Shown here piece by piece: positions 34,219-64,000 of a stretch of DNA of 64,000 bases. Source of the DNA: Octopus bimaculoides (Eukaryota); assembly GCF_001194135.2 (NCBI RefSeq), contig NC_069003.1, positions 1,446,135-1,510,134 on the forward strand, in the 5' to 3' direction. Both the position numbers and the translations under genes were made by a program. Below the pieces are notes generated by a model. The model made no database searches, was not told the DNA's origin, and saw nothing but the letters and a program-made list of their open reading frames with translations. Each line of letters starts with the position of its first letter. Position 1 is the stretch's first letter.

Positions 34219-34483
34219 NNNNNNNNNNNNNNNNNNNNNNNNNNNNNNNNNNNNNNNNNNNNNNNNNNNNNNNNNNNNNNNNNNNNNNNNNNNNNNNNNN
34301 NNNNNNNNNNNNNNNNNNNNNNNNNNNNNNNNNNNNNNNNNNNNNNNNNNNNNNNNNNNNNNNNNNNNNNNNNNNNNNNNNNNNNNNNNNNNNNNNNNNN
34401 NNNNNNNNNNNNNNNNNNNNNNNNNNNNNNNNNNNNNNNNNNNNNNNNNNNNNNNNNNNNNNNNNNNNNNNNNNNNNNNNNNN

Positions 34484-34713
34484 AATATAAAGATATCTAC
34501 ATAAATATATATATCCATAAAATATAAAGATATCTACATAAATATATATATCCATAAAATATAAAGATATCTACATAAATATATATATCTATAAAATATA
34601 AAGATATCAACATAAATATATATATCTATAAAATATAAAGATATCAACATAAATATATATATCCATAAAATATAAACATATCAACATAAATAAATATATA
34701 TCCATAAAATATA

Positions 34714-34715
<2 letters not shown>
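34484..34715. repeat. 37 bp AT-rich minisatellite, about 6 copies, abutting an N gap
   Basis: The unit aatataaagatatctacataaatatatatatccataa occurs at 34484, 34521 and 34558 and then in progressively varied copies. Confidence 0.92.
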
Positions 34716-34784
<69 letters not shown>

Positions 34785-36775: not shown

Positions 36776-37390
36776 CGTGCAGTTACTGTTAATACCTCGT
36801 TCAGTGATTTAACATTAAATATATATATATATATATATATATATANNNNNNNNNNNNNNNNNNNNNNNNNNNNNNNNNNNNNNNNNNNNNNNNNNNNNNN
36901 NNNNNNNNNNNNNNNNNNNNNNNNNNNNNNNNNNNNNNNNNNNNNNNNNNNNNNNNNNNNNNNNNNNNNNNNNNNNNNNNNNNNNNNNNNNNNNNNNNNN
37001 NNNNNNNNNNNNNNNNNNNNNNNNNNNNNNNNNNNNNNNNNNNNNNNNNNNNNNNNNNNNNNNNNNNNNNNNNNNNNNNNNNNNNNNNNNNNNNNNNNNN
37101 NNNNNNNNNNNNNNNNNNNNNNNNNNNNNNNNNNNNNNNNNNNNNNNNNNNNNNNNNNNNNNNNNNNNNNNNNNNNNNNNNNNNNNNNNNNNNNNNNNNN
37201 NNNNNNNNNNNNNNNNNNNNNNNNNNNNNNNNNNNNNNNNNNNNNNNNNNNNNNNNNNNNNNNNNNNNNNNNNNNNNNNNNNNNNNNNNNNNNNNNNNNN
37301 NNNNNNNNNNNNNNNNNNNNNNNNNNNNNNNNNNNNNNNNNNNNNNNNNNNNNNNNNNNNNNNATATATATATATATATACACATATATA

Positions 37391-37551
37391 CGACGGGCTT
37401 CTTTCAGTTTCCGTCTACCAAATCCACTCACAAGGCTTTGGTCGGCCCGAGGCTATAGTAGAAGACACTTGCCCAAAGTGCCACGCAGTGGGACTGAACC
37501 CGCAACCATGTGGTTGGTAATCAAGCTACTTACCACACAGCCACTCCCGCG
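37391..37551 (-). mobile_element. 5' half of a tRNA-derived SINE (family B), well preserved
   Basis: The minus strand reads gcgggagtggctgtgtggtaagtagc...gggttcagtcccactgcgtggcactttgggcaagtgtcttctactatagcc, with an A-box TGGCTGTGTGG and a B-box GGTTCAGTCC. It is homologous to 10390-10530. Confidence 0.88.
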
Positions 37552-37831
37552 CGTATGTTTTTTTTTATCTCGCCTACAGCCCTAATATATTATGGTATCA
37601 TCTTTGCTCTGCGGATGAAATTTTTACCACAACTAAATCATCTATTTTCTCTCTTTTCTGAAGTCATTACGCTGATTTGCCAAAGAATATTCCCTCCAAT
37701 ATTAGACAACATTCAGGTTTTATTAAACACGTGACCACTAATTATTTCGCTGTCTTCATTTTTGTCGTCAAATACATAGTTAAAGTTTTACCAACGTAGC
37801 CTAAACGGACTAATCTTAGTTACCAGATTTC

Positions 37832-40800
37832 TTTCGTACGTACGTACGTTCGTCCCCTCGTTCTTTCCTTCATTCGTTCTTTTTTTTTGTTTGTTCGATC
37901 GTTCGTTCATAGGTCCGTTCGTACGTATGTACGTACGTACGTTCGTTCGTTCTTTCGTTCGTTCGTTGGATCTTTCTTTCATTCGTACGTACGAAAGTTC
38001 GTTCGTTCGTACGTACGTATGTACGTACGTTCGTTCGCTTCTTCGTTCATTCTTTCGTACATACGTACGTACGTATATACGTTCGTTCGTTTGTACGTAC
38101 GAGAGTACGTACGTACGAGCATGCGTACGTACGTTCCTTCGATCGTTCGTTCGTTCTTTCGTGTATTCTTACGTTCGTTCGATCGGGTGTACGTACTTAA
38201 GTACGTACATAGTACATACGTTCTATCGTTCATTCGTTCTTTCTGTCGTTCATACAAACCTAGGTATGTACGCACGTACGTTTGTTTTTTCGTTCGAACG
38301 TACGTTCGTTCTTTCGTTCGTAAGAACGTACGTTCCTACGTTCGTTCTCGTGTTCGTTCGTTCGTTCGATCTTACATACGTAACAACGTAGGTACGTTCT
38401 TTCGTTCGATCGTACGTACATACGTATGTTCATTCGTTAGTTCGTTCGTGCCTTCGTAATCGAAAGAACGGAAGAACGAACGAAAGAATAAACGAACGTA
38501 CGAGCGAATGATCGAAAGTACAAACATACGTTCGTTCGAACGAACGAATGAACTTACGAACGAATGACCGAACTAACAAACGAATGAACGAAAGAACGAA
38601 CGTACATACGTACGTACCTATGTATGTACGTACGAACGAACGATCGAACAAACATACGAACGTACGAAAGAAAAAAAGAACGAACGTATGAACGAACAAA
38701 AGAATGAAAGAACGTACGTACGTACGTACAAACGAACGATTGAAAGAAAGAACAAACGAACGTACTTACGTACCAACGAACGAACGTACGTATATAGCTA
38801 GGTATGTACGAACGAACGAACGAACGTAGGAACGTACGTACGTACGAATACACGAACGAACGATCGAAGGAACGTACGCACGTACCTAAGTACGTACGTA
38901 TGAACGAACAAAAGAACGCATGTACGTAAATACGTACGTCCAAAAGAGCGAACTACTTTCGTACGTACGAACTAAACAACGAACGTACGTTCGTACGAAC
39001 AAACGTACGTACGTAAGTACGTACGAACGGACCTATGAACGAACGAAGGAAGGAACGAACGAGCGTAAGTATGTACGTAGGTAAGAACGAACGTACATAA
39101 GTACGTACGTACGAAAGAACGAACGTAGGTACGGACGCTCGAATAATCGAACGAAAGCATCTACATATCTCTGTACGTACGAGCGAATGAACGTACGTAC
39201 GTATGTACGAACGAGTGTACGTACGTACGAAAGATTGTACGTACGAACGAACGAACTAAATGAAGGAAGGAAGGAACAAACGAACGATAGTACGTACGAA
39301 CGAACGAGCGATCCAACGAACGAACGAACAAACGATCGAACGCGCGTACAAACGAACGAACGTATATACGTAAGTACGTACGTATATACGAACGAAAGAA
39401 CGAACGTACGTGCGAACGAACGTACGAACGAACGAACGTACGTACGTACTTACGAACGAACGTACTTAAGAACGAATGTAGGTACGTACATAGGTACGTA
39501 CGAATGAACGAGCGTACATATATATGTACGTACGTTACTACGTACGTACGAACGAACTTACGTACGTACGAACGAATCAACGTACGTACATACAAACGAA
39601 CGAACGTATGTACGTACGTTCGATGAACGAACGAACGTACGTACGAACGAACGAACGTACTTACGAACGAACGAAGGTAATAACGAACGTACGTACGTAC
39701 ATAGGTACGTATGTAAGAAGGAATGAACGAACGTACATAAATATGTACGTACGTAACGAATGAGCGTACGTACATACGAACGAACTATCGAACGTACGTA
39801 TGTACGTACGAACGAACGAACGAAGGAACGTACGTATCATCGCACGAACGAACGGATGAACGATTGAACGAACGAACGTACGTACATACATAGGTATATA
39901 CGAACGAATGAAACACCGAAAGAGCGTACGTACGTACAAACGAACGAACAGACGTAGGAATGTACGTTCGAACGAATGAACAATTTAACGGAAGAACATA
40001 CGAACGTACGTGGTTACGAAGGTACGAACGAACGAACTAACGAACGAACGACAGTACGTACATACGAACGAACGAACGAAATGAAGGAAGGAACGAACGA
40101 ATGAACGTACGTACGTACGTACGAACGAACTAACGAATGAAATTACGTATATACGTTGGTTCGTTTGTACGTGCGTTCGATCTATAGCTCGTTGTTTTGT
40201 GCATTCATACGTATATACGTTCGTTCATTCGTCCGTTCGTACGTACGTACTATCGTGCGTTCGTACATACGTACGTACGTTCATTCACTTGTTCGTTCGT
40301 ACGTACGTACGTTCATTCTTTCGTTCGTTCATTTGTTCGTACAAACGTATGTACGTACGTACGTACGTATATACGTTTGTTGATTTGTACGTGCGTTCGA
40401 TTTTTTGTGCGTTCGTACGTGCATACGTTCGTTCGTTAGTTCCTTCGTTCGTAGGTACGTACGTGCGTTCCTACGTTCGTTCTTGTGTTCGTTCGTACGT
40501 TCGTTCTTTCGATCGTACGTACGTACGTTCGTTCGTTCGTACGATCGTTCCTTCGTTCGTTCGTACGTACGTACTATCGTGCGTTCGTACGTCCCTTCAT
40601 TTCGTTCGTTCGTACGTAGTACTATCTTGCGTTCGTACACACGTACTTTCATTCGATCGTTTGTTCCTTCTTTTTTGCATTCGTACGTACATACGTTCGT
40701 TCGTACGTCCGTAGGTACGTACGTACGTTCCTACGTTCGTTCGTTCGTTCGTCCGTCCGTACGTTCCTAATTCCGTTCTTGCATTCCTTCGTTCGATCGC

Positions 40801-43800
40801 TCGTTCGTTCGTATGTACTTTCGTTCGTTCGTTCGTTCCTTCATTTCGTACGTACGTTCATTCGCTCGTTCGTTCGTACGTACGTTCGTTCTTTCGTTCA
40901 TCGTACGTACGTTCGTACAAACGTACGTATGTACGTATGTACGTATATACGTTCGTTCGTTTGTACGTGCGTTCGATCTACAGTTCGTTATTTTGTGCAT
41001 TCGTACGTATATACGTTCGTTCGTTAGTTCGTTCGTTCGTAGGTATATACGTGCGTTCTTACGTTCGTTCGATCGTCCGTACGTACGTACGATCGTTCCT
41101 TCGTTATTTCGTTCGTACGTCCGTTCGTTCGTTCATACGAACGTGCTTTCGATCGTTTGTTCGTTCTTTTGTGCATTCGTACGTACATACGTTCGTTCGT
41201 TAGTTCTTACGTTCGTATGTCCGTAGGTACACACGTACGTTCCTACATTCGTACGTTCCTTCATCGTACGTACGTTCGTTCATCGTACGTACGTTCGTTT
41301 TTTCGTTCGTTCATCGTACGTACGTTCGTTTTTTCGTTCGTTTATTCGTTAGTACAAACGTACGTACTTACGTATATACGTTCGTTCGTTCGTTTGTACG
41401 TGCGTTCGATCGTTTGGTCGTTCTTTTGTGCCTTCGTACGTACATACGTTCGTTCGTTAGTTCGTTCATTCGTAGGAACGTACGTACGTACGTTAATACG
41501 TTCGTTCTTGCGTTCGTTCGTGCGTTCGTTCGTTCGTGCTTACGTTCGTACGTTCGTTCGTTCGTTTTTCCGTACGTTCCTAATTCCGTTCTTGCATTCC
41601 TTCGTTCGATCGCTCGTTTGTTCGTACGTACTATCGTTCGTTCGTTCGTTCCTCCATTTCGTTTGTTCGTTCGTTCGTACAATCGTTCGTTCGTACGTAC
41701 GTACGTACGTACGTTCATTCGCTCACTCGTTCTTACGTACGTTCGTTCGTACGTACGTTCGTTCGTTCGTTCTTTCGTTCATCGTACGTACGTTCGTACT
41801 TTCGTTCGTTCATTCGTTCGTACAAAGGTCCGTTCGTACGTTAATACGAACGTACGTAAGTCCGTTCGTTCGTTCGTACGTACGTTCGTTCGTACGTACG
41901 TTCGTTCGTCCTTCCGTCCGTTCTAACGTATGTACGTACGTTCGTCCTTTATATCATTCGTACGAACGTACGATCCTAAGTTCGTTCGTTCGATCGCTCG
42001 TTCGTTCGTTCCTTCATTTTGTTCGTTCGTTCGTTCCTTCCTTCATTTCGTTTGTTACTTCTTTTCGTTCTTTCGTCCGTTCGTACGTACGTACTATCGT
42101 GCGTTCGTACATACGTACGTACGTTCATTCGCTTGTTCGTTCGTACATACATACGTTCGTTCGTTAGTTCGTTCGTTCGTACGTACGTACGTAGGTACGT
42201 ACGTACGTTCCTACGTTCGTTCTTGCGTTCGTTCGTGCTTACGTTCGTACTTTCGTTCGTGCGTTCGTTCGTCCGTACGTTCCTAATTCCGTTCTTGCAA
42301 TCCTTCGTTCGATTGCTCGTTCGTTCGTATGTACTATCGTTCGTTCGTTCGTTCCTTCATTTCGTACGTACGTTCATTCGCTCGCTCGTTCGTTCGTACG
42401 TACGTACGTTCCTAATTTCGTTCGTACGTACGTTCGTACGAATGTACGTACGTACGTACGTACGTTCGTTAGTTCGTTCGTTCGTTCATCGTACGTACGT
42501 TCATTCTTTCGTTCGTTCATTTGTTCGTACAAACGTACGTACGTACGTACGTACGTATATACGTTTGTTGATGTGTACGTGCGTTCGATCTTTCGTGCAT
42601 TCATACGTGCATACGTTCGTTCGTTAGTTCCTTCGTTCGGAGGTACGTACGTGCGTTCGTACTTTCGTTCGTACAAACGGACGTATGTACGTATATACGT
42701 TCGTACGTTCGATCTATAGTTCGTTATTTTGTGCATTCGTACGTATATACGTTCGTTCGTTAGTTCGTTCGTTCGTAGGTACATACGTGCGTTTTTACGT
42801 TCGTTCGTTCGTTCGTTCATACGAACGTGCGTTCGATCGTTTGTTCGTTCTTTTGTGCATTCGTACGTACATAAGTTCGTTCGTTAGTTCGTACGTCCGT
42901 AGGTACACACGGACGTTCCTACATTCGTACGTTCGTTCATCGTACGTACGTTCGTTTTTTCGTTCGTTCGTTCATCGTACGTACGTTCGTTTATTCGTTC
43001 GTTTATTCGTTAGTACAAACGTACGTACGTACGTATATACGTTCGTTCGTTCGTCCGTACGTTCGTTCGTACTATCGTTCGTTCGTCCTTCCGTCCGTTC
43101 TGACGTATGTACGTACGTTCGTCCGTTATTTCATTCGTACGATCGCTCGGTCGTTCGTTCCTTCATTTTGTTCTTTCGTTCCTTCCTTCCTTCATTTCGT
43201 TTGTTCCTTCTTTTCGCTCTTTCGTCCGCTCGTACGTACGTACTATCGTGCGTTCGTACATATGTACGTACGTTCATTCGCTTGTTCGTTCGTACGTACA
43301 TACGTTCGTTCGTTAGTTCGTTCGTTCGTACGTCCGTATGTACGTACGTACGTTCCTGCGTTCGTTCTTGCGTTCGATTGCTCGTCCGTTCGTAAGTACT
43401 ATCGTTCGTTCGTTCGTTCGTTCCTTCATTTCGTACGTACGTTCATTCGCTAGTTCGTTCGTACGTACGTACGTATCTACGTTTGTTGATTTGTACGTGC
43501 TTTCGATATGTTGTGCATTCGTACGTGCATACGTTCGTTCGTTAGTTCCTTCGTTCGTAGGTACCTACGTGCGTTCCTACGTTCGTTCTTCTGTTCGTTC
43601 GTACGTTCGTTCTTTCGATCTTACGTACGTACGTTCGTTCGTTCGTTCGTACGATCGTTCCTTCGTTAGTTCGTACGTACGTACTATCGTGCGTTCGTAC
43701 GTCCCTTCATTTCGTTCGTTCGTACGTACGTACTATCGTGCGTTCGTACATACTTACGTTTATTCGCTCGTTCGTTCGTACGTACGTTCGTTCTTTCTTT

Positions 43801-46800
43801 CATCGTACGTTCGTACTTTCGTTCGTACAAATGTACGTATATACGTTCGTGCGTTCGATCGTTTGTTCGTTCTTTTGTGCATTCGTACGTACATATGTTC
43901 GTTCGTTAGTTCTTACGTTCGTACGTCCCTAGGTACACACGTACGTTCCTACATTCGTACGTTCTTTCATCGTACGTACGTTCGTTTTTTCGTTCGTTTA
44001 TTCGTTAGTACAAACGTACGTACGTACGTATATACGTTCGTTCGTTCGTTTATAGGTGCGTTCGATCGTTTGTTCGTTCTTTTGTGCCTTCGTGCATACA
44101 TACGTTCGTTCGTTAGTTCGTTCGTTCGTAGGTACGTAAGTACGTTCCTACGTTCGTTCTTGCGTTCGTTCGTGCGTTCGGTCGTGCTTACGATCGTACG
44201 TACGTACGTTCGTTAGTTCGTTCGTTCGTTCATCGTACGTACGTTCATCGTACGTACGTTCATCGTACGTACGTTCATTCTTTCGTTCGTGCATTTGTTC
44301 GTACAAACGTACGTACGTGCGTGTATACGTTTGTTGATTTGTACGTGCGTTCGATCTTTTGTGCATTCGTACGTGCATACGTTCGTTCGTTAGTTCCTTC
44401 ATTCGTAGGTACGTACGTGCGTTCGTACGTTCGTTCTTGTGTTCGTTCGTACGTTCGTTCTTTCGATCGTACGTACGTACGTTCGTTCGGTCGTACGATC
44501 GTTCATTCGCTCGTTCGTTCGTACGTACGTTCGTTCATTCGCTCGTTCGTTCGTACGTACGTTCGTTCTTTCGTTCATCCTATGTACGTTCGTACTTTCG
44601 TTCGTACAAACGTACGTATGTACGTATATACGTTCGTCCGTTTGTACGTGCGTTCGATCTATAGTTCGTTCTTTTGTGCCTTCGTACGTACATACGTTCG
44701 TTCGTTAGTTCGTTCGTTCGTAGGTACGTACGTACGTTCCTAAGTTCGTTCTTGCGTTCGTTCGTGCTTACGTTCGTTCGTTTGTCCGTACGTTCCTAAT
44801 TCCGTTCTTGCATTCCTTCGTTCGATCGCTTGNNNNNNNNNNNNNNNNNNNNNNNNNNNNNNNNNNNNNNNNNNNNNNNNNNNNNNNNNNNNNNNNNNNN
44901 NNNNNNNNNNNNNNNNNNNNNNNNNNNNNNNCTTTCATTCTTTCGTACAAAGGCCCGTTCGTGCGTTAATACGTACGTACGTAAGTCCATTCGTACATTC
45001 GTTCGTTCGTACGTACGTTCGTTCGTACTATCGTTCGTTCGTCCTTCCGTCCGTTCTGACGTATGTACGTACGTTCGTCCGTTATTTCATTCGTACGAAC
45101 GTACGATCCTAAGTTCGTTCTTGCGTTCGTTCGTTCGATCGCTCGTTCGTTCCTTCCTTCATTTTGTTCGTTCGTTCGTTCCTTCATTTCGTTCGTTCCT
45201 TCTTTTCGTTCTTTCGTCCGTTCGTACGTACGTACTATCGTGCGTTCGTACATACGTACGTACGTTCATTCGCTTGTTCGTACATACGTACGTACGTTCA
45301 TTCGCTTGTTCGTTCGTAGGTACGTACGTACGTTCGTTCGTTCATCGTACGTACGTTCGTTTATTCGTTCGTTCATCGTACGTACGTTCATTCGCTCGTT
45401 CGTTCATACGTACGTACGTTCGTAATTTCGTTCGTACGTACGTTCGTACGAATGTACGTACGTACGTTCGTTAGTTCGTTCGTTCGTTCATCGCACGTAC
45501 GTTCATTCTTTCGTTCGTTCATTTGTTCGTACAAACGTACGTACGTACGTGTATACGTTTGTTGATTTGTACGTGCGTTCGATGTTTTGTGCATTCGTAC
45601 GTGCGTTCGATCTATAGTTCATTATTTTGTGCGTTCGTTCGTTAGTTCGTTCGTTCGTAGGTACATACGTGCGTTCTTACGTTCGTTCGTTCGATCGTCC
45701 GTACGTACGTACTATAGTTCGTTCGTTATTTCGTTCGTACGTTCGTTCGTTCCTTCATACGAACGTGCGTTCGATTGATTGTTCGTTCTTTTGTGCATTC
45801 GTACGTACATACGTTCGTTCGTTAGTTCTTACGTTCTTACGTCCGTAGGTACACACGTACGTTCGTACGTTCGTTCATCGTACGTACGTTCGTTTTTTCG
45901 TTCGTTCATCGTACGTACGTTCGTTTTTTCGTTCGTTCATCGTACGTACGTTCGTTTTTTCGTTCGTTCATCGTACGTACGTTCGTTTTTTCGTTCGTTN
46001 NNNNNNNNNNNNNNNNNNNNNNNNNNNNNNNNNNNNNNNNNNNNNNNNNNNNNNNNNNNNNNNNNNNNNNNNNNNNNNNNNNNNNNNNNGTTCGTACGTT
46101 CGTTCATCGTACGTACGTTCGTTTTTTCGTTCGTTCATCGTACGTACGTTCGTTTTTTCGTTCGTTCATCGTACGTACGTTCGTTCATTCGTTAGTACAA
46201 ACGTACGTACGTACGTATATACGTTCGTTCGTTCGTTTGTCCGTACGTTCCTAATTCCGTTCTTGCATTCCTTCCTTCGATCGCTCGTTCGTTCGTACGT
46301 ACTAGCGTTCGTTCGTTCGTTCCTTCATTTCGTTTGTACGTTCGTTCGTACTATCGTTCGTTCGTACTATCGTTCGTTCGTACATACGTACGTACGTACG
46401 TTCATTCGCTCGCTCGTTCGTACGTACGTTCGTTCGTTCGTTCTTTCGTTCATCGTACGTACGTTCGTACTTTCGTTCGTTCATTCGTTCGTACAAAGGT
46501 CCGTTCGTACGTTAATACGTACGTACGTAAGTTCATTCGTTATTTCGTTCATACTTTCGTTCGTACGTTCGTTCGTTCGTGCGTACGTTCGTTCGTACTA
46601 TCGTTCGTTCGTCCTTCCTTCCGTTCTGACGTATGTACGTACGTTCGTCCGTTATTTCATTCGTACGAACGTACGATCCTAAGTTCGTTCTTGCGCTCGT
46701 TCGTTCGATCGCTCGTTCGTTCGTTTCTTCATTTTGTTCGTTCGTTCCTTCCTTCCTTCATTTCGTTCGTTCATCGTACGTACGTTCGTTTATTCGTTCG

Positions 46801-52800: not shown

Positions 52801-55800
52801 CCTTACGTTCATTCGCTCGTTCATCGTACATACGTTCATTCTTTCGTTCATCGTACGTACGTTCGTACTTTCGTTCGTTCATTCGTTCGTACAAAGGTCC
52901 GTTCGTACGTTAATACGTACGTACGTAAGTCCATTCGTTAGTTCGTTCGTTCGTCCTTCCGTCCGTTCTGACGTATGTACTTACGTTCGTCCATTCTTGC
53001 ATTCCTTCGTTCGATTGCTCGTTCGTTCGTATGTACTATCGTTCGTTCGTTCGTTCCTTCATTTCGTACGTACGTTGATTCGCTGGTTCGTTCGTACGTA
53101 CGTACGTTCCTAATTTCGTTCGTTCGTTCGTTCGTGCGTACGTACTATCGTGCGTTCGTACATCCTTACGTTCATTCGCTCGTTCATCGTACATACGTTC
53201 ATTCTTTCGTTCGTTCATTTGTTCGTACAAACGTACGTACGTACGTACGTACGTATATACGTTTGTTGATTTGTACGTGCGTTCGATCTTTTGTGCATTC
53301 GTACGTGCATACGTTCGTTCGTTAGTTCCTTCGTTCGGAGGTACGTACGTGCGTTCCTACGTCCATTCTTCTGTTCGTTCGTACGTTCGTTCTTTCGATC
53401 GTACGTACGTACGTTNNNNNNNNNNNNNNNNNNNNNNNNNNNNNNNNNNNNNNNNNNNNNNNNNNNNNNNNNNNNNNNNNNNNNNNNNNNNNNNNNNNNN
53501 NNNNNNNNNNNNNNNTCGTTCGTTCCTTCATTTCGTTTGTTCGTTCGTTCGTACTATCGTTCGTTTGTACATACGTACGTACGTACGTTCATTCGCTCAC
53601 TCGTTCGTACGTACGTTTGTTCGTACGTACGTTCGTTCGTTCTTTCGTTCATCGTACGTACGTTCGTACTTTCGTTCGTTCATTCGTTCGCACAAAGGTC
53701 CGTTCGTACGATAATACGTACGTACGTAAGTCCATTCGTTAGTTCGTTCGTACGTTCGTTCGTTCGTTCGTTCGTTCGTACGTACATTCGTTCGTACTAT
53801 CGTTCGTTCGTCCTTCCGTCCGTTCGTTAGTTCCTTCGTTCGGAGGTACGTACGTGCGTTCCTACGTTCGTTCTTCTGTTCGTTCGTACGTTCGTTCTTT
53901 CGATCGTACGTACGTACGTACGTTCGTTCGTTCGTACGATCGTTCCTTCGTTAGTTCGTACGTACGTACTATCGTGCGTTCGTACGTCCCTTCATTTCGT
54001 TCGTTCGTACGTACGTACTATCGTGCGTTCGTACATACTTACGTTCATTGGATCGTTCGTTCGTACGTACGTACGTTCGTTCTTTCGTTCATCGTACGTA
54101 CGTTCATACTTTCGTTCGTACAAACGTACGTATGTACGTATATACGTTCGTGCGTTCGATCTATAGTTCGTTATTTTGTGCATTCGTACGTATATACGTT
54201 CGTTCGTTAGTTCGTTCGTTCGTAGGTACATGCGTGCGTTCTTACGTTCGTTCGTTCGATCGTCCGTACGTACGTACTATCGTTCTTTCGTTATTTCGTT
54301 CGTACGTTCGTTCGTTCGTCCATACGAACGTGCGTTCGATCGTGTGTACGTTCTTTTGTGCATTCGTACGTACATACGTTCGTTCGTTAGTTCTTACGTT
54401 CGTACGTCCGTAGGTACACACGTACGTTACTACATTCGTACGTTCGTTCAACGTACGTACGTTCGTTGTTTCGTTCGTTCGTTCATCGTACGTACGTTCG
54501 TTTTTTTCGTTCGTTTATTCGTTAGTACAAACGTACGTACGTACGTATATACGTTCGTTCGTTCGTTTGTACGTGCGTTCTATCGTTTGTTCGTTCTTTT
54601 GTGCCTTCGTTCCTACATACGTTCGTTCGTTAGTTCGTTCGTTCGAAGGTACGTACGTACGTTCCTACGTTCGTTCTTGCATTCCGTTCTTGCATTCCTT
54701 CGTTCGATCGCTCGTTCGATCGTATGTACTAGCGTTCGTTCGTTCCTTCATTTCGTTCGTTCGTACATACGTACGTACGTACGTTCATTCGCTCGCTCGT
54801 ACGTTCGTTCGTTCGTTCGTACGTACATTCGTTCGTTCGTTCTTTCGTTCATCGTATGTACGTTCGTACTTACGTTCGTACAAACGTACGTATGTACGTA
54901 TATACGTTCGTTCGTTTGTACGTGCGTTTGATCTATACTTCGTTATTTTGTGCATGCGATGTATATACGTTCGTTCGTTCGTAGGTACATACGTGCGTTC
55001 TTACGTTCGTTCGTTCGATCGTCCGTACGTACGTACTATCGTTCGTTCGTTATTTCGTTCGTACGTTCGTTCGTTCCTTCATACGAACGTGCGTTCGATC
55101 GTTTGTTCGTTCTTTTGTGCATTCGTACGTACATACGTTCGTTCGTTAGTTCTTACGTTCGTACGTCCGTAGGTACACACGTACGTTCCTACATTCGTAC
55201 GTTCGTTCAACGTACGTACGTTCAACGTACGTACGTTCGTTGTTTCGTTCGTTCGTTCATCGTACGTACGTTCGTTTTTTTCGTTCGTTTATTCGTTAGT
55301 ACAAACGTACGTACGTACGTATATACGTTCGTTCGTTCGTTTGTACGTGCGTTCGATCGTTTGTTCGTGCGTTCGATCGTTTGTTCGTTCTTTTGTGCCT
55401 TCGTTCCTACACACGTTCGTTCGTTAGTTCGTTCGTTCGTAGGTACGTACGTACGTTCCTACGTTCGTTCTTGCGTTCGTTCGTGCGTTCGTTCATGCTT
55501 ACGTCCGTACGTTCGTTCATTCGTTTGTCCGTACGTTCCTAATTCCGTTCTTGCATTCCTTCGTTCGATCGCTCGTTCGTTCGTTCGTTCCTTCATTTCG
55601 TTTGTTCGTTCGTTCGTACTATCGTTCCTTCCTTCCTTCATTTCGCTTGTTCCTTCTTTTCGTTCTTTCGTCCGTTCGTACGTACGTACTATCGTGCGTT
55701 CGTACATACGTACGTACGTTCATTCGCTTGTTCGTTCGTACGTACATACGTTCGTTCGTTAGCTCGTTCGTTCGTACGTCCGTAGGTACGTACGTACGTT

Positions 55801-58800
55801 CCTGCGTTCGTTCTTGCGTTCGTTCGTGCTTACGTTCGTACGTTTGTTCGTTCGTTCGTTCGTACGTTCCTAATTCCGTTCTTGCATTCCTTCGTTCGAT
55901 TGCTCGCTCGTTCGTATGTACTATCGTTCGTTCGTTCGTTTCTTCATTTCGTACGTACGTTCATTCGTACGTACGTACGTTCCTAAATTCGTTCGTACGT
56001 ACGTTCGTACGAATGTACGTACGTACGTTCGTTAGTTCGTTCGTTCGTTCATCGTACGTACGTTCGTTCTTTCGTTCGTTCATTTGTTCGTACAAACGTA
56101 CGTACGTACGTACATATATACGTTTGTTGATTTGTACGTGCGTTCGATCTTTTGTGCATTCGTACGTGCATACGTTCGTTCTTCTGTTCGTTCGTATGTT
56201 CGTTCTTTCGATCGTACGTACGTACGTCCGTTCGTTCGTACGATCGTTCCTTCGTTAGTTCGTACTATCGTGCGTTCGTACGTCCCTTCATTTCGTTCGT
56301 TCGTACGTACGTACTATCGTGCGTTCGTACATACTTACGTTCATTCGCTCGTTAGTTCGTACGTACGTTCATTCTTTCGTTCATCGTACGTACGTTCGTA
56401 CTTTCGTTCGTACAAACGTACGTATGTACGTATATACGTTCGTGCCTTCGATCTATAGTTCGTTATTTTGTGCAATCGTACGTATATACGTTCGTTCGTT
56501 AGTTCGTTCGTTCGTAGGTACATACGTGCGTTCTTACGTTCGTTCGTTCGATCGTCCGTTCGTTCGTACGTTCGTTCGTTCCTTCATACGAACGTGCGTT
56601 CGATCGTTTGTTCGTTCTTTTGTGCATTCGTACGTACATACGTTCGTTCGTTAATTCTTACGTTCGTACGTCCGTAGGTACACACGTACGTTCCTACATT
56701 CGTACGTTCGTTCGTTCGTTCGTTTGTCCGTACGTTCCTAATTCCGTTCTTGCATTCCTTCGCTCGTTCGTTCGTACGTACGTACTATTGTGCGTTCGTA
56801 CATACGTAGGTTCATTCGCTCGTTCGTTCGTACGTACGTTCGTTCTTTCGTTCATCGTATGTACGTTCGTACTTTCATTCGTACAAACGTACGTATGTAC
56901 GTATATACGTTCGTTCGTTTGTACGTGCGTTTGATCTATAGTTCGTTATCTTGTGCATTCGTACTTATATACGTTCGTTCGTTCGTAGGTACATACGTGC
57001 GTTCTTACGTTCGTTCGTTCGATCGTCCGTACGTACGTACTATCGTTCGTTCGTTATTTCGTTCGTACGTTCGTTCGTTCCTTCATACGAACGTGCGTTC
57101 GATCGTTTGTTCGTTCTTTTGTGCATTCGTACGTACATACGTTCGTCCGTTATTTCATTGGTACGAACGTACGGTCCTAAGTTTGTTCTTGGGTTCGTTC
57201 GTTCGATCGCTCGTTCGTTCGTTCCTCCATTTTGTTCGTTCGTTCTTTCGTTCCTTCATTTCGTTCGTTCCTTCTTTTCGTTCTTTCGTCCGTTCGTACG
57301 TACGTACAATCGTGCGTTCGTACACACGTAGTACGTTCATTCGCTTGTTCGTTCGTACGTACATACGTTCGTTCGTTAGTTCGTTCGATCGTACGTCCGT
57401 AGGTACGTACGTACGTTCCTGCGTTCGTTCTTGCGTTCGTTCGTGCTTACGTTCGTTCGTTCGTTCGTCCGTACGTTCCTAATTCCGTTCTTGCATTCCT
57501 TCGTTCGAATGCTCGTTCGTTCGTATGTACTATCGTTCGTTCGTTCGTTCCTTCATTTCGTACGCACGTTCATTCGCTCGTTCGTTCGTACGTACGTTCG
57601 TTCTTTCGTTCATCGTACGTACGTTCGTACTTTCGTTCGTACAAACTTACGTATGTACGTATATACGTTCGTGCGTTCGATCTATAGTTCGTTATTTTGT
57701 GCATTCGTACGTATATACGTTCGTTCGTAGATACATACGTGCGTTCTTACGTTCGTTCGTTCGATTGTCCGTACGTACGTACTATCGTTCTTTCGTTACT
57801 TCGTTCGTACGTTCGTTCGTTCGTTCATACGAACGTGCGTTCGATCGTTTGTTCGTTCTTTTGTGCATTCGTACGTACATACGTTCGTTCGTTAGTTCTT
57901 ACGTCCGTAGGTACACACGTACGTTCCTACATTCGTACGTTCGTTCATCGTACGTACGTTCGTTGTTTCGTTCGTTCGTTCATCGTACGTACGTTCGTTT
58001 TTTTCGTTCGTTTATTCGTTAGTACAAACGTACATACGTACGTATATACTTTCATTCGTTCGTTTGTACGTGCGTTCGATCGTTTGTTCGTTCTTTTGTG
58101 CCTTCGTTCCTACATACGTTCGTTCGTTAGTTCGTTCATTCGTAGGTACGTACGTACGTTCCTACGTTCGTTCTTGCGTTCGTTCGTGCGTTCGTTCATG
58201 CTTACGTCCGTGCGTTCGTTCGTTCGTTTGTCCGTACGTTTCTAATTCCGTTCTTGCATTCCTTCGTTCGATCGCTCGTTCGTTCGTACGTTCTAGCGTT
58301 CGTTCGTTCGTTCGTTCCTTCATTTCGTTTGTTCGTTCGTTCGTACTATCGTTCGTTCTTACATACGTACGTACGTACGTTCATTCGCTCGCTCGTTCGT
58401 ACTAATTCGTTCGTTCGTTCATCGTACGTACGTTCATTTGTTCGTACAAACATACGTACGTACGTACGTGTATACGTTTGTTGATTTGTACGTGCGTTCG
58501 ATCTTTTGTGCATTCGTACGTACATACGTTCGTTCGTTCGTTAGTTCCTTCGTTCGTAGGTACGTACGTGCATTCCTTCGATCATTCTTCTGTTCGTTCG
58601 TATGTTCGTTCTTTCGATTGTACGTTCGTTCGTTCGTACGATCGTAATATCGTGCGTTCGTACGTACGTACTATCGTGCGTTCGTACGTCCTTTCATTTC
58701 GTTCGTTCGTACGTACGTACTATCGTGCGTTCGTACATACTTACGTTCATTCGCTCGTTCGTTCGTACGTACGTTCGTTCTCTCGTTCATCGTATGTACG

Positions 58801-61800
58801 TTCGTACTTTCGTTCGTACAAACGTACGTATGTTCGTATATACGTTCGTTCGTTTGTACGTGCGTTCGATCTATAGTTCGTTATTTTGTGCATTCGTACG
58901 TATATACGTTCGTTCGTTAGTTCGTTCGTTCGTAGGTACATACGTGCATTCGTTCGTTCGATCGTCCGTACGTACGTACTATCGTTCGTTCGCTATTTCG
59001 TTCGTACGTTCGTTCGTTCCTTCATACGAACGTGCGTTCGATCGTTTGTTCGTTCTTTTGTGCATTCGTACGTACATACGTTCGTTCGTTAGTTCTTACG
59101 TTCGTACGTCCGTAGGTACACGCGTACGTTCGTTCATCGTACGTACGTTCGTGCTTACGTTCGAACGTTCGTTCGTTCGTTTGTCCGTACGTTCCTAATT
59201 CCGTTCTTGCATTCCTTCGTTCGATCGCTCGTTCGTTCGATCGCTCGTTCGTTCGTACGTACTAGCGTTCGTTCGTTCGTTCCTTCATTTCGTTTGTTCG
59301 TTCGTTCGTACTATCGTTCGTTCGTACATACGTACGTACGTACATTCATTCGCTCGCTCGTTCGTACGTACGTTCGTTCGTACGTAAATTCGTTCGTTCG
59401 TTCTTTCGTTCATCGTACGTACGTTCGTACTTTCGTTCGTTCATTCGTTCGTACAAAGGTCCGTTCGTACGTTAATACGTACGTACGTAAGTTTATTCGT
59501 TAGTTCGTTCGTTCGTCCTTCGGTCCGTTCGTCCTTCGGTCCGTTCTGACGTATGTACGTACGTTCGTCCGTTATTTCATTCGTACGAACGTACGATCCT
59601 AAGTTCGTTCTTGGGTTCGTTCGTTCGATCGCTCGTTCGTTCGTTCGTTCCTTCATTTCGTTCGTTCCTTCTTTTCGTTCGTTCCTACGTCCGTAGGTAC
59701 GTACGTACGTTCCTGCGTTCGTTCGTGCTTACGTTCGCACGTTCGTTCGTTCGTTCGTCCGTACGTTCCTAATTCCGTTCTCGCATTCCTTCGTTCGATT
59801 GCTCGTTCGTTCGTATGTACTATCGTTCGTTCGTTCGTTCCTTCATTTCGTACGAACGTTCATTCGCTCGTTCGTTCGTACGTACGTTCATTCTTTCGCT
59901 CATCGTACGTACGTTCGTACAAACGTACGTATGTACGTATATACGTTCGTTCGTTAGTTCGTAGGTACATACGTGCGTTCTTTCGATCGTCCGTACGTAC
60001 GTACTATCGTTCGTTCCTTCATTTCGTACGTACGTTCATTCGCTCGTTCGTTCGTACATACGTACGTTCACTCGCTCGTTCGTTCGTACATCGTATGTAC
60101 GTTCGTACTTTCGTTCGTACAAACGTACGTATGTACGTACGTTCGTTCGTTTGTACGTGCGTTCGATCTATAGTTCGTTATTTAGTGCATTCGTACGTTT
60201 ATACGTTCGTTCGTTAGTTCGTTCGTTCGTAGGTACATACGTGCGTTCTTACGTTCGTTCGTTCGATCGTCCGTACGTATGTACTATCGTTCTTTCATTA
60301 TTTCGTTGGTACGTTCGTTCGTTCCTTCATACGAACGTGTGTTCGATCGTTTGTTCGTTCTTTTGTGCATTCGTACGTACATACGTTCGTTCGTTAATTC
60401 TTACGTTCGTACGTCCGTATGTACACACGTACGTTCCTACGTTCGTTCATCGTACGTACGTTCGTTTATTCGTTCGTTCGTACTATTGTGCGTTCGTACA
60501 TACGTACGAATAACGATCGAACGACCGAACGTACGTACGAACGAACGTTCGAACGAACTAAGAAATGAACTTATGTACGTACGTATTAACGTACGAGCGG
60601 ACGAAATATCGTACGTACGTACGTTTGTACGAACGAATGAACGAAAGTACGAACGAACGTACGTATGAACGAACGAACGAACGAACGAACGAACGATAGT
60701 ACGTACGAACAAAAAAACGATCGATAGCATGTTCAAACGAACGATCGTATATATGTACGTACGTACGTATGTAGGAACGAATGAACAAACGAACGAACGA
60801 ACGTACGTACGTACGACCGAACGTACGAACGTACGTACGTACTAACGAACGTACGATCGAACTAACGAAATATTGTACGTACGTAATACGTATATACGAT
60901 CAAACGAACGAGCGATCAAATGAACGAACGCAAGAACGAATTTAGGAAAGTAATTTCGTAGGAATGAAATAATGAACGAACGTACGTACATACGTCCGAA
61001 CTGACAGACGAAATGACAGACGAACGAACGTACGTTCGAATGAAAGTACGTACGAACGAAAGAAAGAACGTACTTACGTAAGCAAAAAGGAAGGCACGAA
61101 CGAACGCAACAACGAAAGTAGGAATGTACGTATGACGAACGAACGAACGAAAGAACGAACGTACGAACGATCGGAAGAACGAACGAACGTACGTATGTAC
61201 GAACGAACGTACGTACGTACGAACGAACGTACGTACGTACGAACGATCGAAAGAACGAACGTACGAACGAGCGCAAGAACGATCGTAGGAACGCACGTAC
61301 GTACCTACGAACGGACGAACTAACTAACCAACGTATGTACGTACGAATGCACCAAAGATCGAACGAACGTACAAACGAACGAACGTACGTAGGTACGTAC
61401 GTTTGTACGAACAAATGAACGAACGAAAGAATGAACGTATGAACGAACGAACGTACGTACGTACGAACGAAGGAACGTACGTACGTTCGTACGAACGTAC
61501 GTACGTACGAACGAACGAGCGAATGCAAGAACGAAATTAGGAACGTACGGACGAACGAACGCACGAACGAACGCAAGAACGAACGTAGGAACGTACGTAC
61601 GTTTGTACGAACGAATGAACGAACGAAAATACGAACGTACGTACGATGAACGAACGATAAAACGAACGTACGTACGATGAACGAACGAACGAACGAACGA
61701 ACGTACGTACGTACGAACAAGCGAATGAACGTACGTACGTATGTACGCACGCACGATAGTACGTACGTAGGAACGGACGGACGAACGAAATGCAGTAAAT

Positions 61801-64000
61801 GAAGAAACGAACGAACGAGCGATCGAACGAACGAACACAAGAACGAACTTAGGATCGTACGTTCGTACGAATGAAATCACGTACGAACGTACGTACATAC
61901 GTCCAAACGGACGGAAGGACGAACGAATGAACGTACGAAATAACGAAAGGACGATAGTACAAACTATCGAACGGACGAACGTACGTACGAACGAACGAAC
62001 GTATGTACGAACGAAAGAACGATCGTACGTACATATGCAAGAAACAACTCAGGAACGAACGCACGAACGAACGTAGGAACGTGTGTACGTACCTACGAAC
62101 GAAAGAACTAACGAACGATCGTATGTACGTACGAATGCACGAAAGAACGAACAAACGATCGAACGCACGTTCGTACGAACGAACGAACGAACGAAATAAC
62201 GAACGAACGATAGTACTACGTACGAACGAACGAACGTACGTACGAACGAACGATCGTACGTAAGAACGAACGAACTAACGAATGAACTTACGTAGTACTA
62301 TGTACGTACGAACGGACGAAATATCGTACGTAGGTAATTACGTATGTACGATCGAATGGACGAACGAACGTACGTACGTAAGTGCGTACGAACGAACTAT
62401 CGATCGAATGGACGAACGCAAGAACGAACTTAGGAAAGTACGTTCGTAGGAATGAAATAACGAAGGAACGTACGTATAACGTCCAAACGGAGGGACGGAC
62501 GAACGAACGTAAGAACGTACGTCCGTACGATCGAACGAACGATCGTAAGAACGAACGAACGTACGTACGTACGATCGAATGAACGAACGAACGTACGTAC
62601 GATCGAATGAACGAACGAACGTACGTACGTACGATCGAATGAACGAACGTACGAACTAACGAACGAACGTATGTACGTACGAATTCACAAAAGATCGAAC
62701 GCACGTACAAACGAACGAACGTATATACGTACGTACGTTTGTACGAACAAATGAACGAACGAAAGAATGAACGTACGTACGATGAACGAAGGAACGTACG
62801 TACGTTCGTACGAACGTACGTACGTACGAACGAACGAGCGAATGAACGTACGTATGTATGTATGTACGAAAGCACGATAATACGCACGTACGAACGAAAT
62901 GAAGGAACGAACGAACGAACGATAGTACGTACGAACGAACGAGTGATCGAACGAAAGAATGCAAGAACGAAATTAGGAACGTACGGACGAACGTGCGAAG
63001 GTAAGCACGAACGAACGCACGAACGAACGCAAGAACGAACGTAGGAAGGTACGTATTTACCTACGAACGAACGAACTATGTACGTACGAACGAACAAGCG
63101 AATGAACGTACGTATGTACGAACGATAGTACGTACGGACGAACGAACGAAAGGAAGGAACGAACGAAATGAGGGAACGAACGAACGAGCGAATGAACGCA
63201 AGAATAAACTTAGGATCGTACGTTCGTACGAACTGACGGAAGGACGAACGAATGAACGTACGAAATAACGAACGAACGATAGTACGCACGTACGAACGAT
63301 CGAACGAACGTACGAACGAACTAACGAATGAACCTACGTACGTACGTATTAACGTACGAACGGACGAAATATCGTACGTACGTAATTACGTATGTACGAT
63401 CGAATGAACGAACGAACGTACGTACATACGTCCGAACGAACGAACTTGCGTACGTACGAACGTAATTACGAAGGAAAGAACGTGCGTACGAACGAAAGAA
63501 CGAACGTACGTACGTACGTAAGCACGAACGAACGCACGAATGAACGCAAGAACGAATGTAGGACCGTACGTACGTACCTACGAACGAACGAACTAACGTA
63601 TGTACGTACGAATGCACAAAAGAACGAACAAACGATCGAACGCACGTTCAAACGAACGAACGTATATACATACTTACGTATGTACGAACGAATGAACGAA
63701 CGTACGTACGTACGTACGAACGAACGTACGTGCGAACGTACGAACGTACGAATGAACGTACGCAAGTACGTACGAACGAACAAACGAACGAATGTACAAT
63801 TGAACGAAAGAACAACGAACGTACGTACGTACAAACGAAGGAACGAACGTACCTTATTACGAAGGTTCGAACGAACGTACGACCGAACTAACGGATGAAC
63901 CTACGTACGTACGATCGAACGAAAGGACGTGCCTACGTTATTACGTATGTACGACCGAACGAACGAACGAACGATCGAAATAACGAACACAAGGACGATC
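37832..64000. repeat. Complex TACG/TTCG tetranucleotide-derived satellite, >26 kb, running off the window edge
   Basis: Seen directly as interleaved (TACG)n and (TTCG)n with recurring longer words. It is TTCG-oriented at ~37832-38458 and ~40150-60505, and CGAA-oriented at ~38461-40145 and ~60506-64000. Confidence 0.98.

What the first reader, a model, noticed from the sequence alone, without database searches (positions are those of the whole stretch)
37832..64000. A >26 kb satellite saturated with CpG in an otherwise AT-rich, CpG-poor window
Both building blocks (TACG, TTCG) put a CpG about every 4 bp. Common variants (TATG, TACA, TTTG, TTCA) are those expected from methyl-CpG deamination, suggesting the array is or was methylated in the germ line. 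(TACG)n is both self-complementary and strictly alternating pyrimidine-purine, so it favours hairpins, cruciforms and Z-DNA, whereas the TTCG runs give strand asymmetry. I know no description of such a satellite in cephalopods. It is a candidate centromeric or heterochromatic domain, or a sink for methyl-CpG- and ACGT-binding proteins (inference).
Basis: partly seen in the sequence, partly recalled or inferred. Interest (0 to 1): 0.72.

Follow-up and report, generated by a model that had tools for sequence, protein, structure and literature searches.

The report
CpG-dense tetranucleotide satellite in an octopod

Summary
From 37833 to the window end there are 23,481 read bases plus seven N gaps of degenerate TTCG/TACG repeats. 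CpG makes up 16.6% of dinucleotides (observed/expected 3.3), and no CpG-free stretch exceeds 29 bp.

It is more than a microsatellite. Modules of 0.3-1 kb recur at 85-93% identity in a loose 1.1-2.9 kb order, which shuffled controls never reproduce. The array also has three strand switches.

Several parts of the interpretation fail:
- **Flank:** it is not CpG-depleted (observed/expected 0.96).
- **Deamination:** private changes scored against module consensuses give CpG transitions only 1.29 times as frequent as non-CpG C/G transitions (p = 0.45). Transitions and transversions at CpG sites number 85 and 71. TpG and CpA are under-represented.
- **Non-B DNA:** pure (TACG)n runs reach only 5 units. 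The flanking (TA)n and (CA)n tracts have far more Z-DNA and cruciform potential.

Centromeric or heterochromatic location cannot be tested here.

The best reading is a neutral or selfish satellite. It grew from a compound AACG/ACGT microsatellite by slippage and unequal exchange, and it kept its CpGs because octopus repeat DNA is mostly unmethylated. Array length and internal order are uncertain between 44.8 and 53.5 kb.

The parts
37833..38455 (+). Array block 1: TTCG/TACG units with the TTCG strand on +. It abuts unique DNA on its left inside one contig.
   Evidence: Counts are TTCG 43, CGAA 2 and TACG 37; CpG is 15.1 per 100 bp. The sequence was read directly.
38456..40150 (-). Array block 2: the same units inverted (CGAA/CGTA on +). 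It has a weak 32-bp period.
   Evidence: Counts are CGAA 127 and TTCG 6. TRF gives period 4 and period 32. The strand switch lies near 38455, at TTCGTAATCGAA.
40151..60507 (+). Array block 3, the main body, with the TTCG strand on +. It has 17,669 read bases and contains all seven gaps. Its recurrent 0.3-1 kb modules follow a loose 1.1-2.9 kb order.
   Evidence: Counts are TTCG 1,422 and CGAA 31. Self-BLAST gives 98 HSPs of at least 250 bp at 85% or more, against 0 in 10 shuffles. The switch near 40150 lies at the 12-bp palindrome ACGTATATACGT.
60508..64000 (-). Array block 4: inverted again, and cut off by the end of the window.
   Evidence: Counts are CGAA 281 and TTCG 10. It matches block 3 in inverted orientation at 81-85% over 350-512 bp. 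The switch lies at TTCGTACATACGTACGAA.
45870..46180 (+). Local 31-bp tandem sub-array (unit TTCGTTCATCGTACGTACGTTCGTTTTTTCG) with perfect copies, broken by gap 46000-46089.
   Evidence: There are 4 perfect copies left of the gap and 3 right of it. Marker spacing across the gap is 136 bp (4x31+12), so the written N length is not exact.
44833..44931 (.). Assembly gap (99 N).
   Evidence: Orientation is the same on both sides, the 4-bp phase is shifted, and paralogues imply 88 to over 600 bp missing.
46000..46089 (.). Assembly gap (90 N) inside the 31-bp sub-array.
   Evidence: The ends are similar edge to edge over about 140 bp, and some paralogue projections are negative (overlap).
47572..48280 (.). 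Assembly gap (709 N).
   Evidence: Orientation is the same on both sides, and paralogues imply 460-1,750 bp.
48862..49637 (.). Assembly gap (776 N).
   Evidence: Orientation is the same on both sides, and no uninterrupted paralogue spans both flanks.
51349..51448 (.). Assembly gap (100 N).
   Evidence: Orientation is the same on both sides, and paralogue projections run from -117 to over 1,100 bp.
51960..52773 (.). Assembly gap (814 N).
   Evidence: The ends are similar edge to edge over about 93 bp.
53416..53515 (.). Assembly gap (100 N) that is not in the program's list.
37385..37545 (-). SINE-like element with a tRNA-like head on the minus strand, about 290 bp left of the array. It serves as the taxonomic marker.
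   Evidence: Its translated + frame hits a hypothetical protein of Argonauta hians at 79% identity over 67% of the query, E 4.7e-11. ARAGORN and Rfam find nothing. The tRNA-like reading rests on my own inspection.
37546..37832 (.). Unique AT-rich DNA between the SINE-like element and the array. The left boundary of the array is abrupt.
   Evidence: Sequence was read directly. The contig 37364-44832 spans the SINE-like element, the unique DNA and 7 kb of array without any N.

Best explanation
This is a non-coding satellite that grew out of a compound tetranucleotide microsatellite, most likely with no sequence-specific cellular function.

**Proposed steps**
1. A (TTCG)n tract (AACG class) acquired TACG units. 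TACG differs from TTCG only by T to A at position 2 and is self-complementary. The two unit types keep interconverting. The A-to-T change at unit position 2 is the fastest private change. It probably arises by slippage or short-patch conversion between neighbouring units rather than by point mutation (inferred).
2. The degenerate tract was then amplified at a larger scale, by unequal exchange or segmental duplication of 0.3-1 kb modules. This produced a loose higher-order order of about 1.1-2.9 kb, and one very recent 31-bp sub-array (module structure shown; mechanism inferred).
3. Three strand switches occurred at short ACGT-type palindromes (switches shown; mechanism inferred).
4. CpG survives at about one per 6 bp because this DNA is not, or only weakly, methylated in the germ line, as is usual for intergenic and repeat DNA in octopus. 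CpGs therefore mutate no faster than other C/G positions (equal rates shown; methylation state inferred).
5. Turnover is fast enough, or the expansion recent enough, that no transposon has settled in 23.5 kb of a transposon-rich genome (absence shown; cause inferred).
For: - Period 4 dominates. TRF gives 64-69% matches, and base autocorrelation is 0.67 at lag 4 against 0.23 at lags that are not multiples of 4.
- Modules are real. There are 562 self-HSPs, of which 98 are at least 250 bp at 85% or more, and the longest is 1,008 bp. Five token shuffles and five first-order Markov shuffles gave 0 in that class.
- Eighteen-base markers recur in fixed local orders (IPJCQ, NGHFED, GCK). The IPJCQ anchor recurs every 1.1-2.9 kb.
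- Private-change spectrum per 1,000 sites: A>T 40, T>A 15, CpG transitions 21, non-CpG C/G transitions 16, A>G 13, T>C 10.
- CpG versus non-CpG C/G transitions give an odds ratio of 1.29, p = 0.45. G:C to A:T transitions run about twice A:T to G:C transitions (p = 5e-5), the ordinary AT bias.
- Array TpG o/e is 0.36 and CpA o/e 0.54. Flank CpG o/e is 0.96.
- No CpG-free interval exceeds 29 bp.
- Shorter compound TTCG/TACG microsatellites of 0.3-0.5 kb exist in unrelated environmental contigs (L007, L011, L021), so this unit pair arises naturally.
[quoted passage not shown] Methylation sits in gene bodies and is low in intergenic DNA and transposons (PMC9476566).
- The long ORFs in the array (up to 336 aa) are a by-product. 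No concatenation of TACG and TTCG contains a stop codon in any of the six frames, as the sequence shows directly. The ORF used as a database query found only generic (TTCA/TTCG)n-type low-complexity translations.
Against: - The methylation state was not measured. The same octopus study reports relatively higher methylation in repeats annotated as satellites, and this array might belong to that class.
- Private changes may include assembly errors, and alignments within low-complexity sequence can be misplaced.
- The non-CpG C/G control is small (993 sites, 16 events), so a CpG excess of up to about 2-fold cannot be excluded.
- Homogenisation could erase older decay.
- 'No function' is a default rather than a finding. 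Copy number and chromosomal location are unknown.
- The array is scaffolded from short contigs between 44.8 and 53.5 kb.
Confidence: 0.62

Rival explanations
1. One reading: a germ-line-methylated heterochromatic or centromeric satellite. On this view the CpGs are (or were) methylated, decay by deamination, and recruit methyl-CpG-binding or ACGT-binding proteins.
For: - Several traits are typical of pericentromeric satellites: a large uninterrupted array with higher-order modules and strand switches, and no transposon insertions.
- Octopus repeats annotated as satellites are relatively more methylated than other repeats (PMC9476566).
- TTCA and TACA are the two commonest variant tetramers.
Against: - CpG transitions are not significantly more frequent than non-CpG C/G transitions (1.29x, p = 0.45).
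- The transition:transversion ratio at CpG sites is about 1.1-1.2.
- TpG and CpA are depleted, with o/e 0.36 and 0.54, and CpG o/e is 3.3.
- The neighbouring DNA is not CpG-depleted (o/e 0.96).
- There is no period of nucleosome size.
- RepeatMasker would most likely label this array a simple repeat, not a satellite (my inference).
Confidence: 0.15
2. A non-B-DNA element. On this view the array works through Z-DNA, cruciforms or hairpins formed by (TACG)n, for example as a fragile site, a replication barrier or a Z-alpha-binding site.
For: - (TACG)n is self-complementary and alternates pyrimidine and purine, as the sequence shows directly.
- Single strands of two 300-nt samples fold better than dinucleotide shuffles (z = -4.4 and -4.35, with 0 of 200 shuffles as good).
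- The three strand switches sit at short palindromes.
Against: - TACG runs are short: 202 of 2 units, 86 of 3, 10 of 4 and 4 of 5.
- The longest alternating pyrimidine-purine tract is 32 bp.
- Palindromes with arms of 8 or more occur at 2.5 per kb (maximum arm 16). The flank has 17 per kb (maximum arm 38) and alternating tracts up to 135 bp.
- Any such property would therefore be stronger in the ordinary (TA)n and (CA)n tracts next door.
- No extended inverted symmetry surrounds the switch points. Arms there are 70-78% complementary, which is the background level.
Confidence: 0.05
3. Largely an assembly artefact. On this view a much shorter or differently ordered repeat was inflated or mis-scaffolded by a short-read assembler, and the strand switches may be false joins.
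For: - There are seven gaps in 9 kb (44.8-53.5 kb).
- Contig ends resemble one another (48281-48744 matches 50922-51348 at 90.5%, and 48281-48634 matches 53051-53415 at 89.9%).
- Two gaps have ends that are similar edge to edge.
- Paralogue projections of gap size are inconsistent and sometimes negative.
Against: - Two long stretches have no N at all: 37364-44832, which includes unique flank and the SINE-like element, and 53516-64000.
- Copies differ by 7-15%, enough for an assembler to tell them apart.
- The palindromes at the switch points (12-18 bp) are, as far as I know, well below the k-mer lengths assemblers normally use, so strand-switch errors are not expected (inference).
- The modules have a consistent local order.
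Confidence: 0.08

Closest known systems
Human HSat2/HSat3 (pericentromeric satellites derived from the pentamer CATTC/GGAAT)
   Same: Both have a very short unit that has degenerated. Both were re-amplified as larger, irregular higher-order blocks. Both form multi-kb arrays with strand inversions and strand-asymmetric base composition. This comparison rests on my own knowledge and was not tested here.
   Different: The unit here is 4 bp (TTCG/TACG) with a CpG in nearly every unit. The chromosomal location is unknown, and there is no sequence homology.
AACG-class and ACGT-class microsatellites, labelled simple repeats (AACG)n and (ACGT)n by RepeatMasker
   Same: The units are identical. Environmental contigs L007, L011 and L021 carry the same TTCG/TACG mixture.
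   Different: Those arrays are 0.3-0.5 kb. This one is at least 23.5 kb, only 56% of its units are canonical, and it has 0.3-1 kb modules at 85-93% identity.
Drosophila dodeca satellite and other CpG-containing, strand-asymmetric simple satellites
   Same: Both are short-unit, CpG-containing satellites with strand asymmetry and local hairpin potential, in a genome with little or no DNA methylation (my own knowledge).
   Different: The unit and the organism differ. Dodeca is known to be pericentromeric, and nothing is known about location here.
Vertebrate CpG islands and CpG-rich macrosatellites (for example D4Z4)
   Same: CpG observed/expected is far above the genome background (3.3).
   Different: GC is 44.9%, below the 50% criterion. 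The unit is 4 bp rather than kilobases. There are no genes or promoters, and the host genome is sparsely methylated.

Membership tests
Satellite DNA | Head-to-tail tandem repetition of a unit | tested here: met
   TRF gives period 4 with 64-69% matches across the region. 65% of CpG spacings are exactly 4 bp. Autocorrelation is 0.67 at lag 4.
Satellite DNA | Long array (tens of kb) without foreign insertions | tested here: met
   There are 23,481 read bases, the largest CpG-free interval is 29 bp, and the array runs off the window end. Caveat: seven assembly gaps.
Satellite DNA | Higher-order or homogenised blocks beyond the basic unit | tested here: met
   There are 98 self-HSPs of at least 250 bp at 85% or more, against 0 in 10 shuffles. 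Marker order recurs.
Satellite DNA | High genomic copy number and heterochromatic location | not testable with these tools
   No reads or whole genome of the source species are available. A specific 24-mer is absent from the metagenome, prokaryote-genome and viral collections.
Microsatellite (simple sequence repeat) | Unit of 1-6 bp | tested here: met
   The unit is 4 bp.
Microsatellite (simple sequence repeat) | Short array (typically under 1 kb) evolving by slippage alone | tested here: not met
   The array is at least 23.5 kb and contains duplicated modules of 0.3-1 kb.
Centromeric satellite | Association with CENP-A; one major array per chromosome | not testable with these tools
   This needs CUT&RUN, FISH or a chromosome-scale assembly.
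Centromeric satellite | Monomer of roughly nucleosome size (frequent but not universal) | tested here: not met
   No period between 100 and 400 bp stands out in TRF or in the autocorrelation. Module spacing is irregular.
Germ-line-methylated, CpG-decaying repeat | CpG transitions far more frequent than other C/G transitions | tested here: not met
   85/4,102 versus 16/993 sites, odds ratio 1.29, p = 0.45. CpG transitions versus transversions are 85:71.
Germ-line-methylated, CpG-decaying repeat | Excess of TpG and CpA, deficit of CpG | tested here: not met
   In the array, TpG o/e is 0.36, CpA o/e 0.54 and CpG o/e 3.3.
Germ-line-methylated, CpG-decaying repeat | 5-methylcytosine actually present | not testable with these tools
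   This needs bisulfite or nanopore reads. The literature gives only class-level data.
CpG island (Gardiner-Garden and Frommer criteria) | GC above 50% and CpG o/e above 0.6 over at least 200 bp | tested here: not met
   CpG o/e of 3.3 meets the criterion, but GC of 44.9% does not.
Z-DNA or cruciform-forming tract | Long uninterrupted alternating purine-pyrimidine tract or long perfect palindrome | tested here: not met
   The longest alternating tract is 32 bp and the longest palindrome arm is 16. Both are shorter and rarer than in the flank. Local hairpin potential is real but modest (z about -4.4).

The most novel reading that the evidence does not exclude
The array could belong to the unusually methylated 'satellite' class reported in Octopus bimaculoides. 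It would then be a CpG-saturated heterochromatin or centromere-associated domain. Its CpGs would be kept despite methylation, either by rapid homogenisation or because it is methylated only in somatic tissue. That would make it a natural reporter of how a mosaic-methylated invertebrate targets DNA methylation to repeats.
Probability: 0.12. Interest if true: 0.6.

Novelty: new member of a known kind. Interest (0 to 1): 0.3.

Why it matters
- **Present value.** The array is mainly of descriptive value: a large, CpG-dense, transposon-free satellite in an octopod genome, with a clear route from compound microsatellite to modular satellite.
- **Methylation.** Its spectrum gives an internal, sequence-only indication that CpGs here mutate like any other C/G. 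This fits the sparse, gene-body-centred methylation of cephalopods.
- **Genome assembly.** It marks a locus where short-read scaffolds are unreliable. It also supplies specific k-mers for checking long-read assemblies.
- **If methylated or centromeric.** It would become a useful handle on repeat-directed methylation or on centromere identity in cephalopods. I found nothing on either in the papers I searched.

Tried and rejected
1. **Coding potential.** The array has 80 ORFs of at least 90 aa on both strands. I rejected them because TACG/TTCG concatenations cannot form stop codons in any frame. A 336-aa ORF used as a query found only generic (TTCA/TTCG)n translations such as FIHSFVRS.
2. **Structured RNA or tRNA.** Rfam and ARAGORN found none in the window.
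3. **Related arrays elsewhere.** The specific 24-mer TTCGTTCATCGTACGTACGTTCGT is absent from the metagenome, prokaryote-genome and viral contig collections. A generic compound pattern found 24 metagenome contigs and no prokaryote genome, and only short microsatellites among them.
4. **Single higher-order period.** I found none. K-mer distances scatter (759, 774, 1299, 1329, 1505 and so on), and base autocorrelation decays smoothly.
5. **Fold-back palindromes at the strand switches.** Arms there are only 70-78% complementary, which is the background level.
6. **Gap sizes from paralogous copies.** The estimates are inconsistent.
7. **Genes in the flank.** There are no convincing ORFs. Two decayed fragments score below Pfam thresholds (HTH_11 at 20 bits against a cut-off of 25, and GIY-YIG at 19.4 against 22.6).
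8. **Literature.** Eight searches and four papers opened gave no description of this array or of cephalopod centromeric satellites. One id look-up failed.
9. **Third protein-database search.** I did not run it. The SINE-like query returned a single cephalopod protein, which suggests the database holds little non-coding cephalopod DNA.


Full report
**What is there.** It holds 23,481 read bases and 2,688 N in seven gaps. One gap, 53416-53515, is missing from the program's list.

The array contains 3,893 CpGs, or 16.6 per 100 bp. CpG observed/expected is 3.2-3.4 in every 2-kb bin. 65% of CpG-to-CpG distances are exactly 4 bp, and most of the rest are 8, 12 or 16. The longest CpG-free interval is 29 bp, so nothing foreign is inserted anywhere in the read sequence.

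Eight consecutive T[AT]CG units occur 30 times, against none in 100 shuffles. Among tetramers read in phase between two canonical units, TTCG is 31%, TACG 25%, and the remaining 44% are variants. The array is therefore quite degenerate. TRF gives 64-69% matches at period 4.

**Surroundings and source.**
- The flank (1-37832) has 34.6% GC and is full of (TA)n and (CA)n tracts, which border most of its assembly gaps.
- The flank is not CpG-depleted. Its CpG observed/expected is 0.96. The phrase 'CpG-poor window' is true only for absolute density.
- I found no convincing gene in the flank, only two decayed fragments scoring below Pfam thresholds.
- A SINE-like element at 37385-37545, when translated, matches a hypothetical protein of the octopod Argonauta hians at 79% identity, E 4.7e-11. 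This supports a cephalopod, probably octopod, origin.
- The contig 37364-44832 joins this element, 290 bp of unique DNA and 7 kb of array without any N. The array is therefore anchored in the host genome.

**Gaps, tested first.**
- All seven gaps have the TTCG strand on + on both sides.
- The 4-bp phase is not preserved across them. It also slips often inside contigs (7-bp and 13-bp spacings), so phase is uninformative. Reading frame is meaningless in non-coding DNA.
- Gap 46000-46089 sits inside a perfect 31-bp tandem repeat, with four copies on the left and three on the right. The two sides are out of register with the 90 N written. This is a typical short-read break in identical repeats.
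- Gaps 46000-46089 and 51960-52773 have ends that are similar edge to edge.
- Projecting gap flanks onto uninterrupted paralogous copies gives inconsistent missing lengths, some of them negative.
- Length and order between 44.8 and 53.5 kb are therefore uncertain. The stretches 37364-44832 and 53516-64000 are continuous.

**Architecture.** The array has four blocks of alternating orientation:

| Block | Coordinates | TTCG strand |
|---|---|---|
| 1 | 37833-38455 | + |
| 2 | 38456-40150 | - |
| 3 | 40151-60507 | + |
| 4 | 60508-64000 | - |

The switches fall at short ACGT-type palindromes, such as ACGTATATACGT near 40150 and TTCGTACATACGTACGAA near 60500. There is no extended inverted symmetry around them.

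Beyond the 4-bp unit there is real larger-scale structure:
- Self-BLAST gives 562 HSPs, 98 of them at least 250 bp at 85% or more, with the longest 1,008 bp at 88.7%.
- Five token shuffles and five first-order Markov shuffles of the same tokens gave none in that class.
- Distinctive 18-mers recur 9-39 times in fixed local orders (IPJCQ, NGHFED, GCK, BB). The IPJCQ anchor recurs every 1.1-2.9 kb.
- No single period dominates.
- Inverted blocks match the main block at only 81-85%, so the inversions are not recent.

**The deamination claim.** I tested it in three ways.
1. *In-phase tetramers.* CpG-site transitions (TTCA, TACA, TTTG, TATG) total 172, and CpG-site transversions total 159.
2. *Differences between paralogous modules.* At CpG sites there are 0.037 transitions and 0.033 transversions per site. 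At non-CpG sites there are 0.016 transitions per site.
3. *Private changes against module consensuses.* This is the most direct test, because it counts events rather than inherited copies and has an internal control. I used 16 module alignments and counted each genomic position once. CpG transitions were 85 in 4,102 sites, and transitions at non-CpG C or G were 16 in 993 sites. The odds ratio is 1.29, p = 0.45.

G:C to A:T transitions run about twice A:T to G:C transitions (p = 5e-5). That is the ordinary AT bias of an AT-rich genome. TpG and CpA are under-represented in the array, with observed/expected 0.36 and 0.54.

To my knowledge methylated CpGs mutate several-fold to more than ten-fold faster than other cytosines, and nothing here resembles that. 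The control is small, so an excess of up to about two-fold cannot be excluded.

The fastest private change is A to T at unit position 2 (40 per 1,000 sites; T to A is 15). This is the switch between unit types, and it points to slippage or short-patch conversion between neighbouring units (the mechanism is inferred).

**The structural claim.** Pure (TACG)n is self-complementary and alternates pyrimidine and purine, but long runs do not occur here.
- There are 202 runs of 2 units, 86 of 3, 10 of 4 and 4 of 5.
- The longest alternating tract is 32 bp in the array, against 135 bp in the flank.
- Palindromes with arms of 8 or more occur at 2.5 per kb in the array (maximum arm 16) and 17 per kb in the flank (maximum arm 38).
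- Two 300-nt samples folded as single-stranded DNA are more stable than dinucleotide shuffles (z = -4.4 and -4.35), through short local hairpins.

The property exists but is modest, and it is weaker than in the ordinary microsatellites next door.

**Related sequences and literature.**
- A specific 24-mer from the array is absent from the metagenome, prokaryote-genome and viral contig collections.
- A generic compound pattern found 24 metagenome contigs. The best of them (L007, L011, L021) carry 0.3-0.5 kb TTCG/TACG compound microsatellites. The unit pair therefore arises elsewhere, but only at microsatellite scale.
[quoted passage not shown] Methylation sits in gene bodies and is low in intergenic DNA and transposons. 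Repeats annotated as satellites are relatively more methylated (PMC9476566).
- I found no paper describing this array or cephalopod centromeric satellites. That is a statement about the held library, not about the whole literature.

**Explanation.** The best-supported reading is a neutral or selfish satellite.
1. It grew from a compound AACG/ACGT microsatellite by slippage.
2. It was then amplified by unequal exchange of 0.3-1 kb modules.
3. It underwent three old inversions and at least one very recent 31-bp amplification.
4. It keeps its CpGs because the DNA is not appreciably methylated in the germ line.

I hold this at about 0.62. The rivals are:
- a methylated heterochromatic or centromeric satellite, 0.15. 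The architecture fits and the spectrum does not, and location is untested.
- mainly an assembly artefact, 0.08. The gapped middle is unreliable, but two long continuous stretches and the anchored left junction argue for a real array.
- a non-B-DNA element, 0.05.

**Comparison and novelty.** The array behaves like other satellites derived from very short units, such as human HSat2/3 or Drosophila simple satellites (my own knowledge). Its units are those of AACG- and ACGT-class microsatellites. It meets the tested criteria of a satellite: tandem structure, long uninterrupted array and higher-order blocks. It fails those of a plain microsatellite (length, modules), of a CpG island (GC 44.9%) and of a methylation-decayed repeat.

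It is a new member of a known kind. Interest is low to moderate, and it would rise if direct data showed methylation or a centromeric location.

Noticed in passing
window 37385-37545: A SINE-like element with a tRNA-like head on the minus strand lies next to a (TA)n-bordered gap. Translated, it matches a hypothetical protein of Argonauta hians (79% identity, E 4.7e-11). That annotated protein may therefore itself be a translated repeat.
   Followed up: partly
window 53416-53515: A seventh assembly gap (100 N) lies inside the array and is not in the list added by the scan's program.
   Followed up: yes
window 45870-46180: A perfect 31-bp tandem sub-array (TTCGTTCATCGTACGTACGTTCGTTTTTTCG) lies inside the satellite and is split by gap 46000-46089. 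It looks like a very recent local amplification, and its copy number is unknown.
   Followed up: yes
window 4675-4761: A 42-bp unit is repeated 2.1 times at 100% identity and contains telomere-like CCCTAA motifs (AATTTCCTAACGCAAACCCTAACCCTAACCCAAACCCTTCAA).
   Followed up: no
window 34484-34772: An AT-rich 37-bp minisatellite with 7.8 copies at 92% matches starts directly after gap 34219-34483.
   Followed up: no
window 27570-27835: A purine-rich tandem repeat with 15- and 33-bp periods (GAAGAGGAG-type) lies in a region of positive AT and GC skew (26-30 kb). It gives long low-complexity ORFs on both strands.
   Followed up: no
window 544-1466, 8234-8443, 19509-19963, 22654-23100, 24571-24872, 26356-26591, 34219-34483, 36846-37363: Most assembly gaps in the flank are bordered by (TA)n or (CA)n-type microsatellites, and translations at the gap edges read IYIYIY. 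The assembly therefore breaks at simple repeats throughout the window.
   Followed up: partly
window 2347-2583 (-) and 2709-2897 (+): Two short ORF fragments give sub-threshold Pfam hits: HTH_11 (20 bits against a cut-off of 25) and GIY-YIG (19.4 against 22.6). They may be decayed transposase-like and Penelope-like remnants, but this is not established.
   Followed up: partly
L007 1-400; L011 566-975; L021 223-764: Environmental metagenome contigs of unknown, probably eukaryotic, origin carry 0.3-0.5 kb compound TTCG/TACG microsatellites. CpG reaches 15-21 per 100 bp in them.
   Followed up: partly
window 37833-64000, all frames: The array yields ORFs of up to 336 aa on both strands, because TACG and TTCG units cannot form stop codons in any frame. 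Gene callers could mistake such arrays for proteins rich in FVRS and YVRT.
   Followed up: yes
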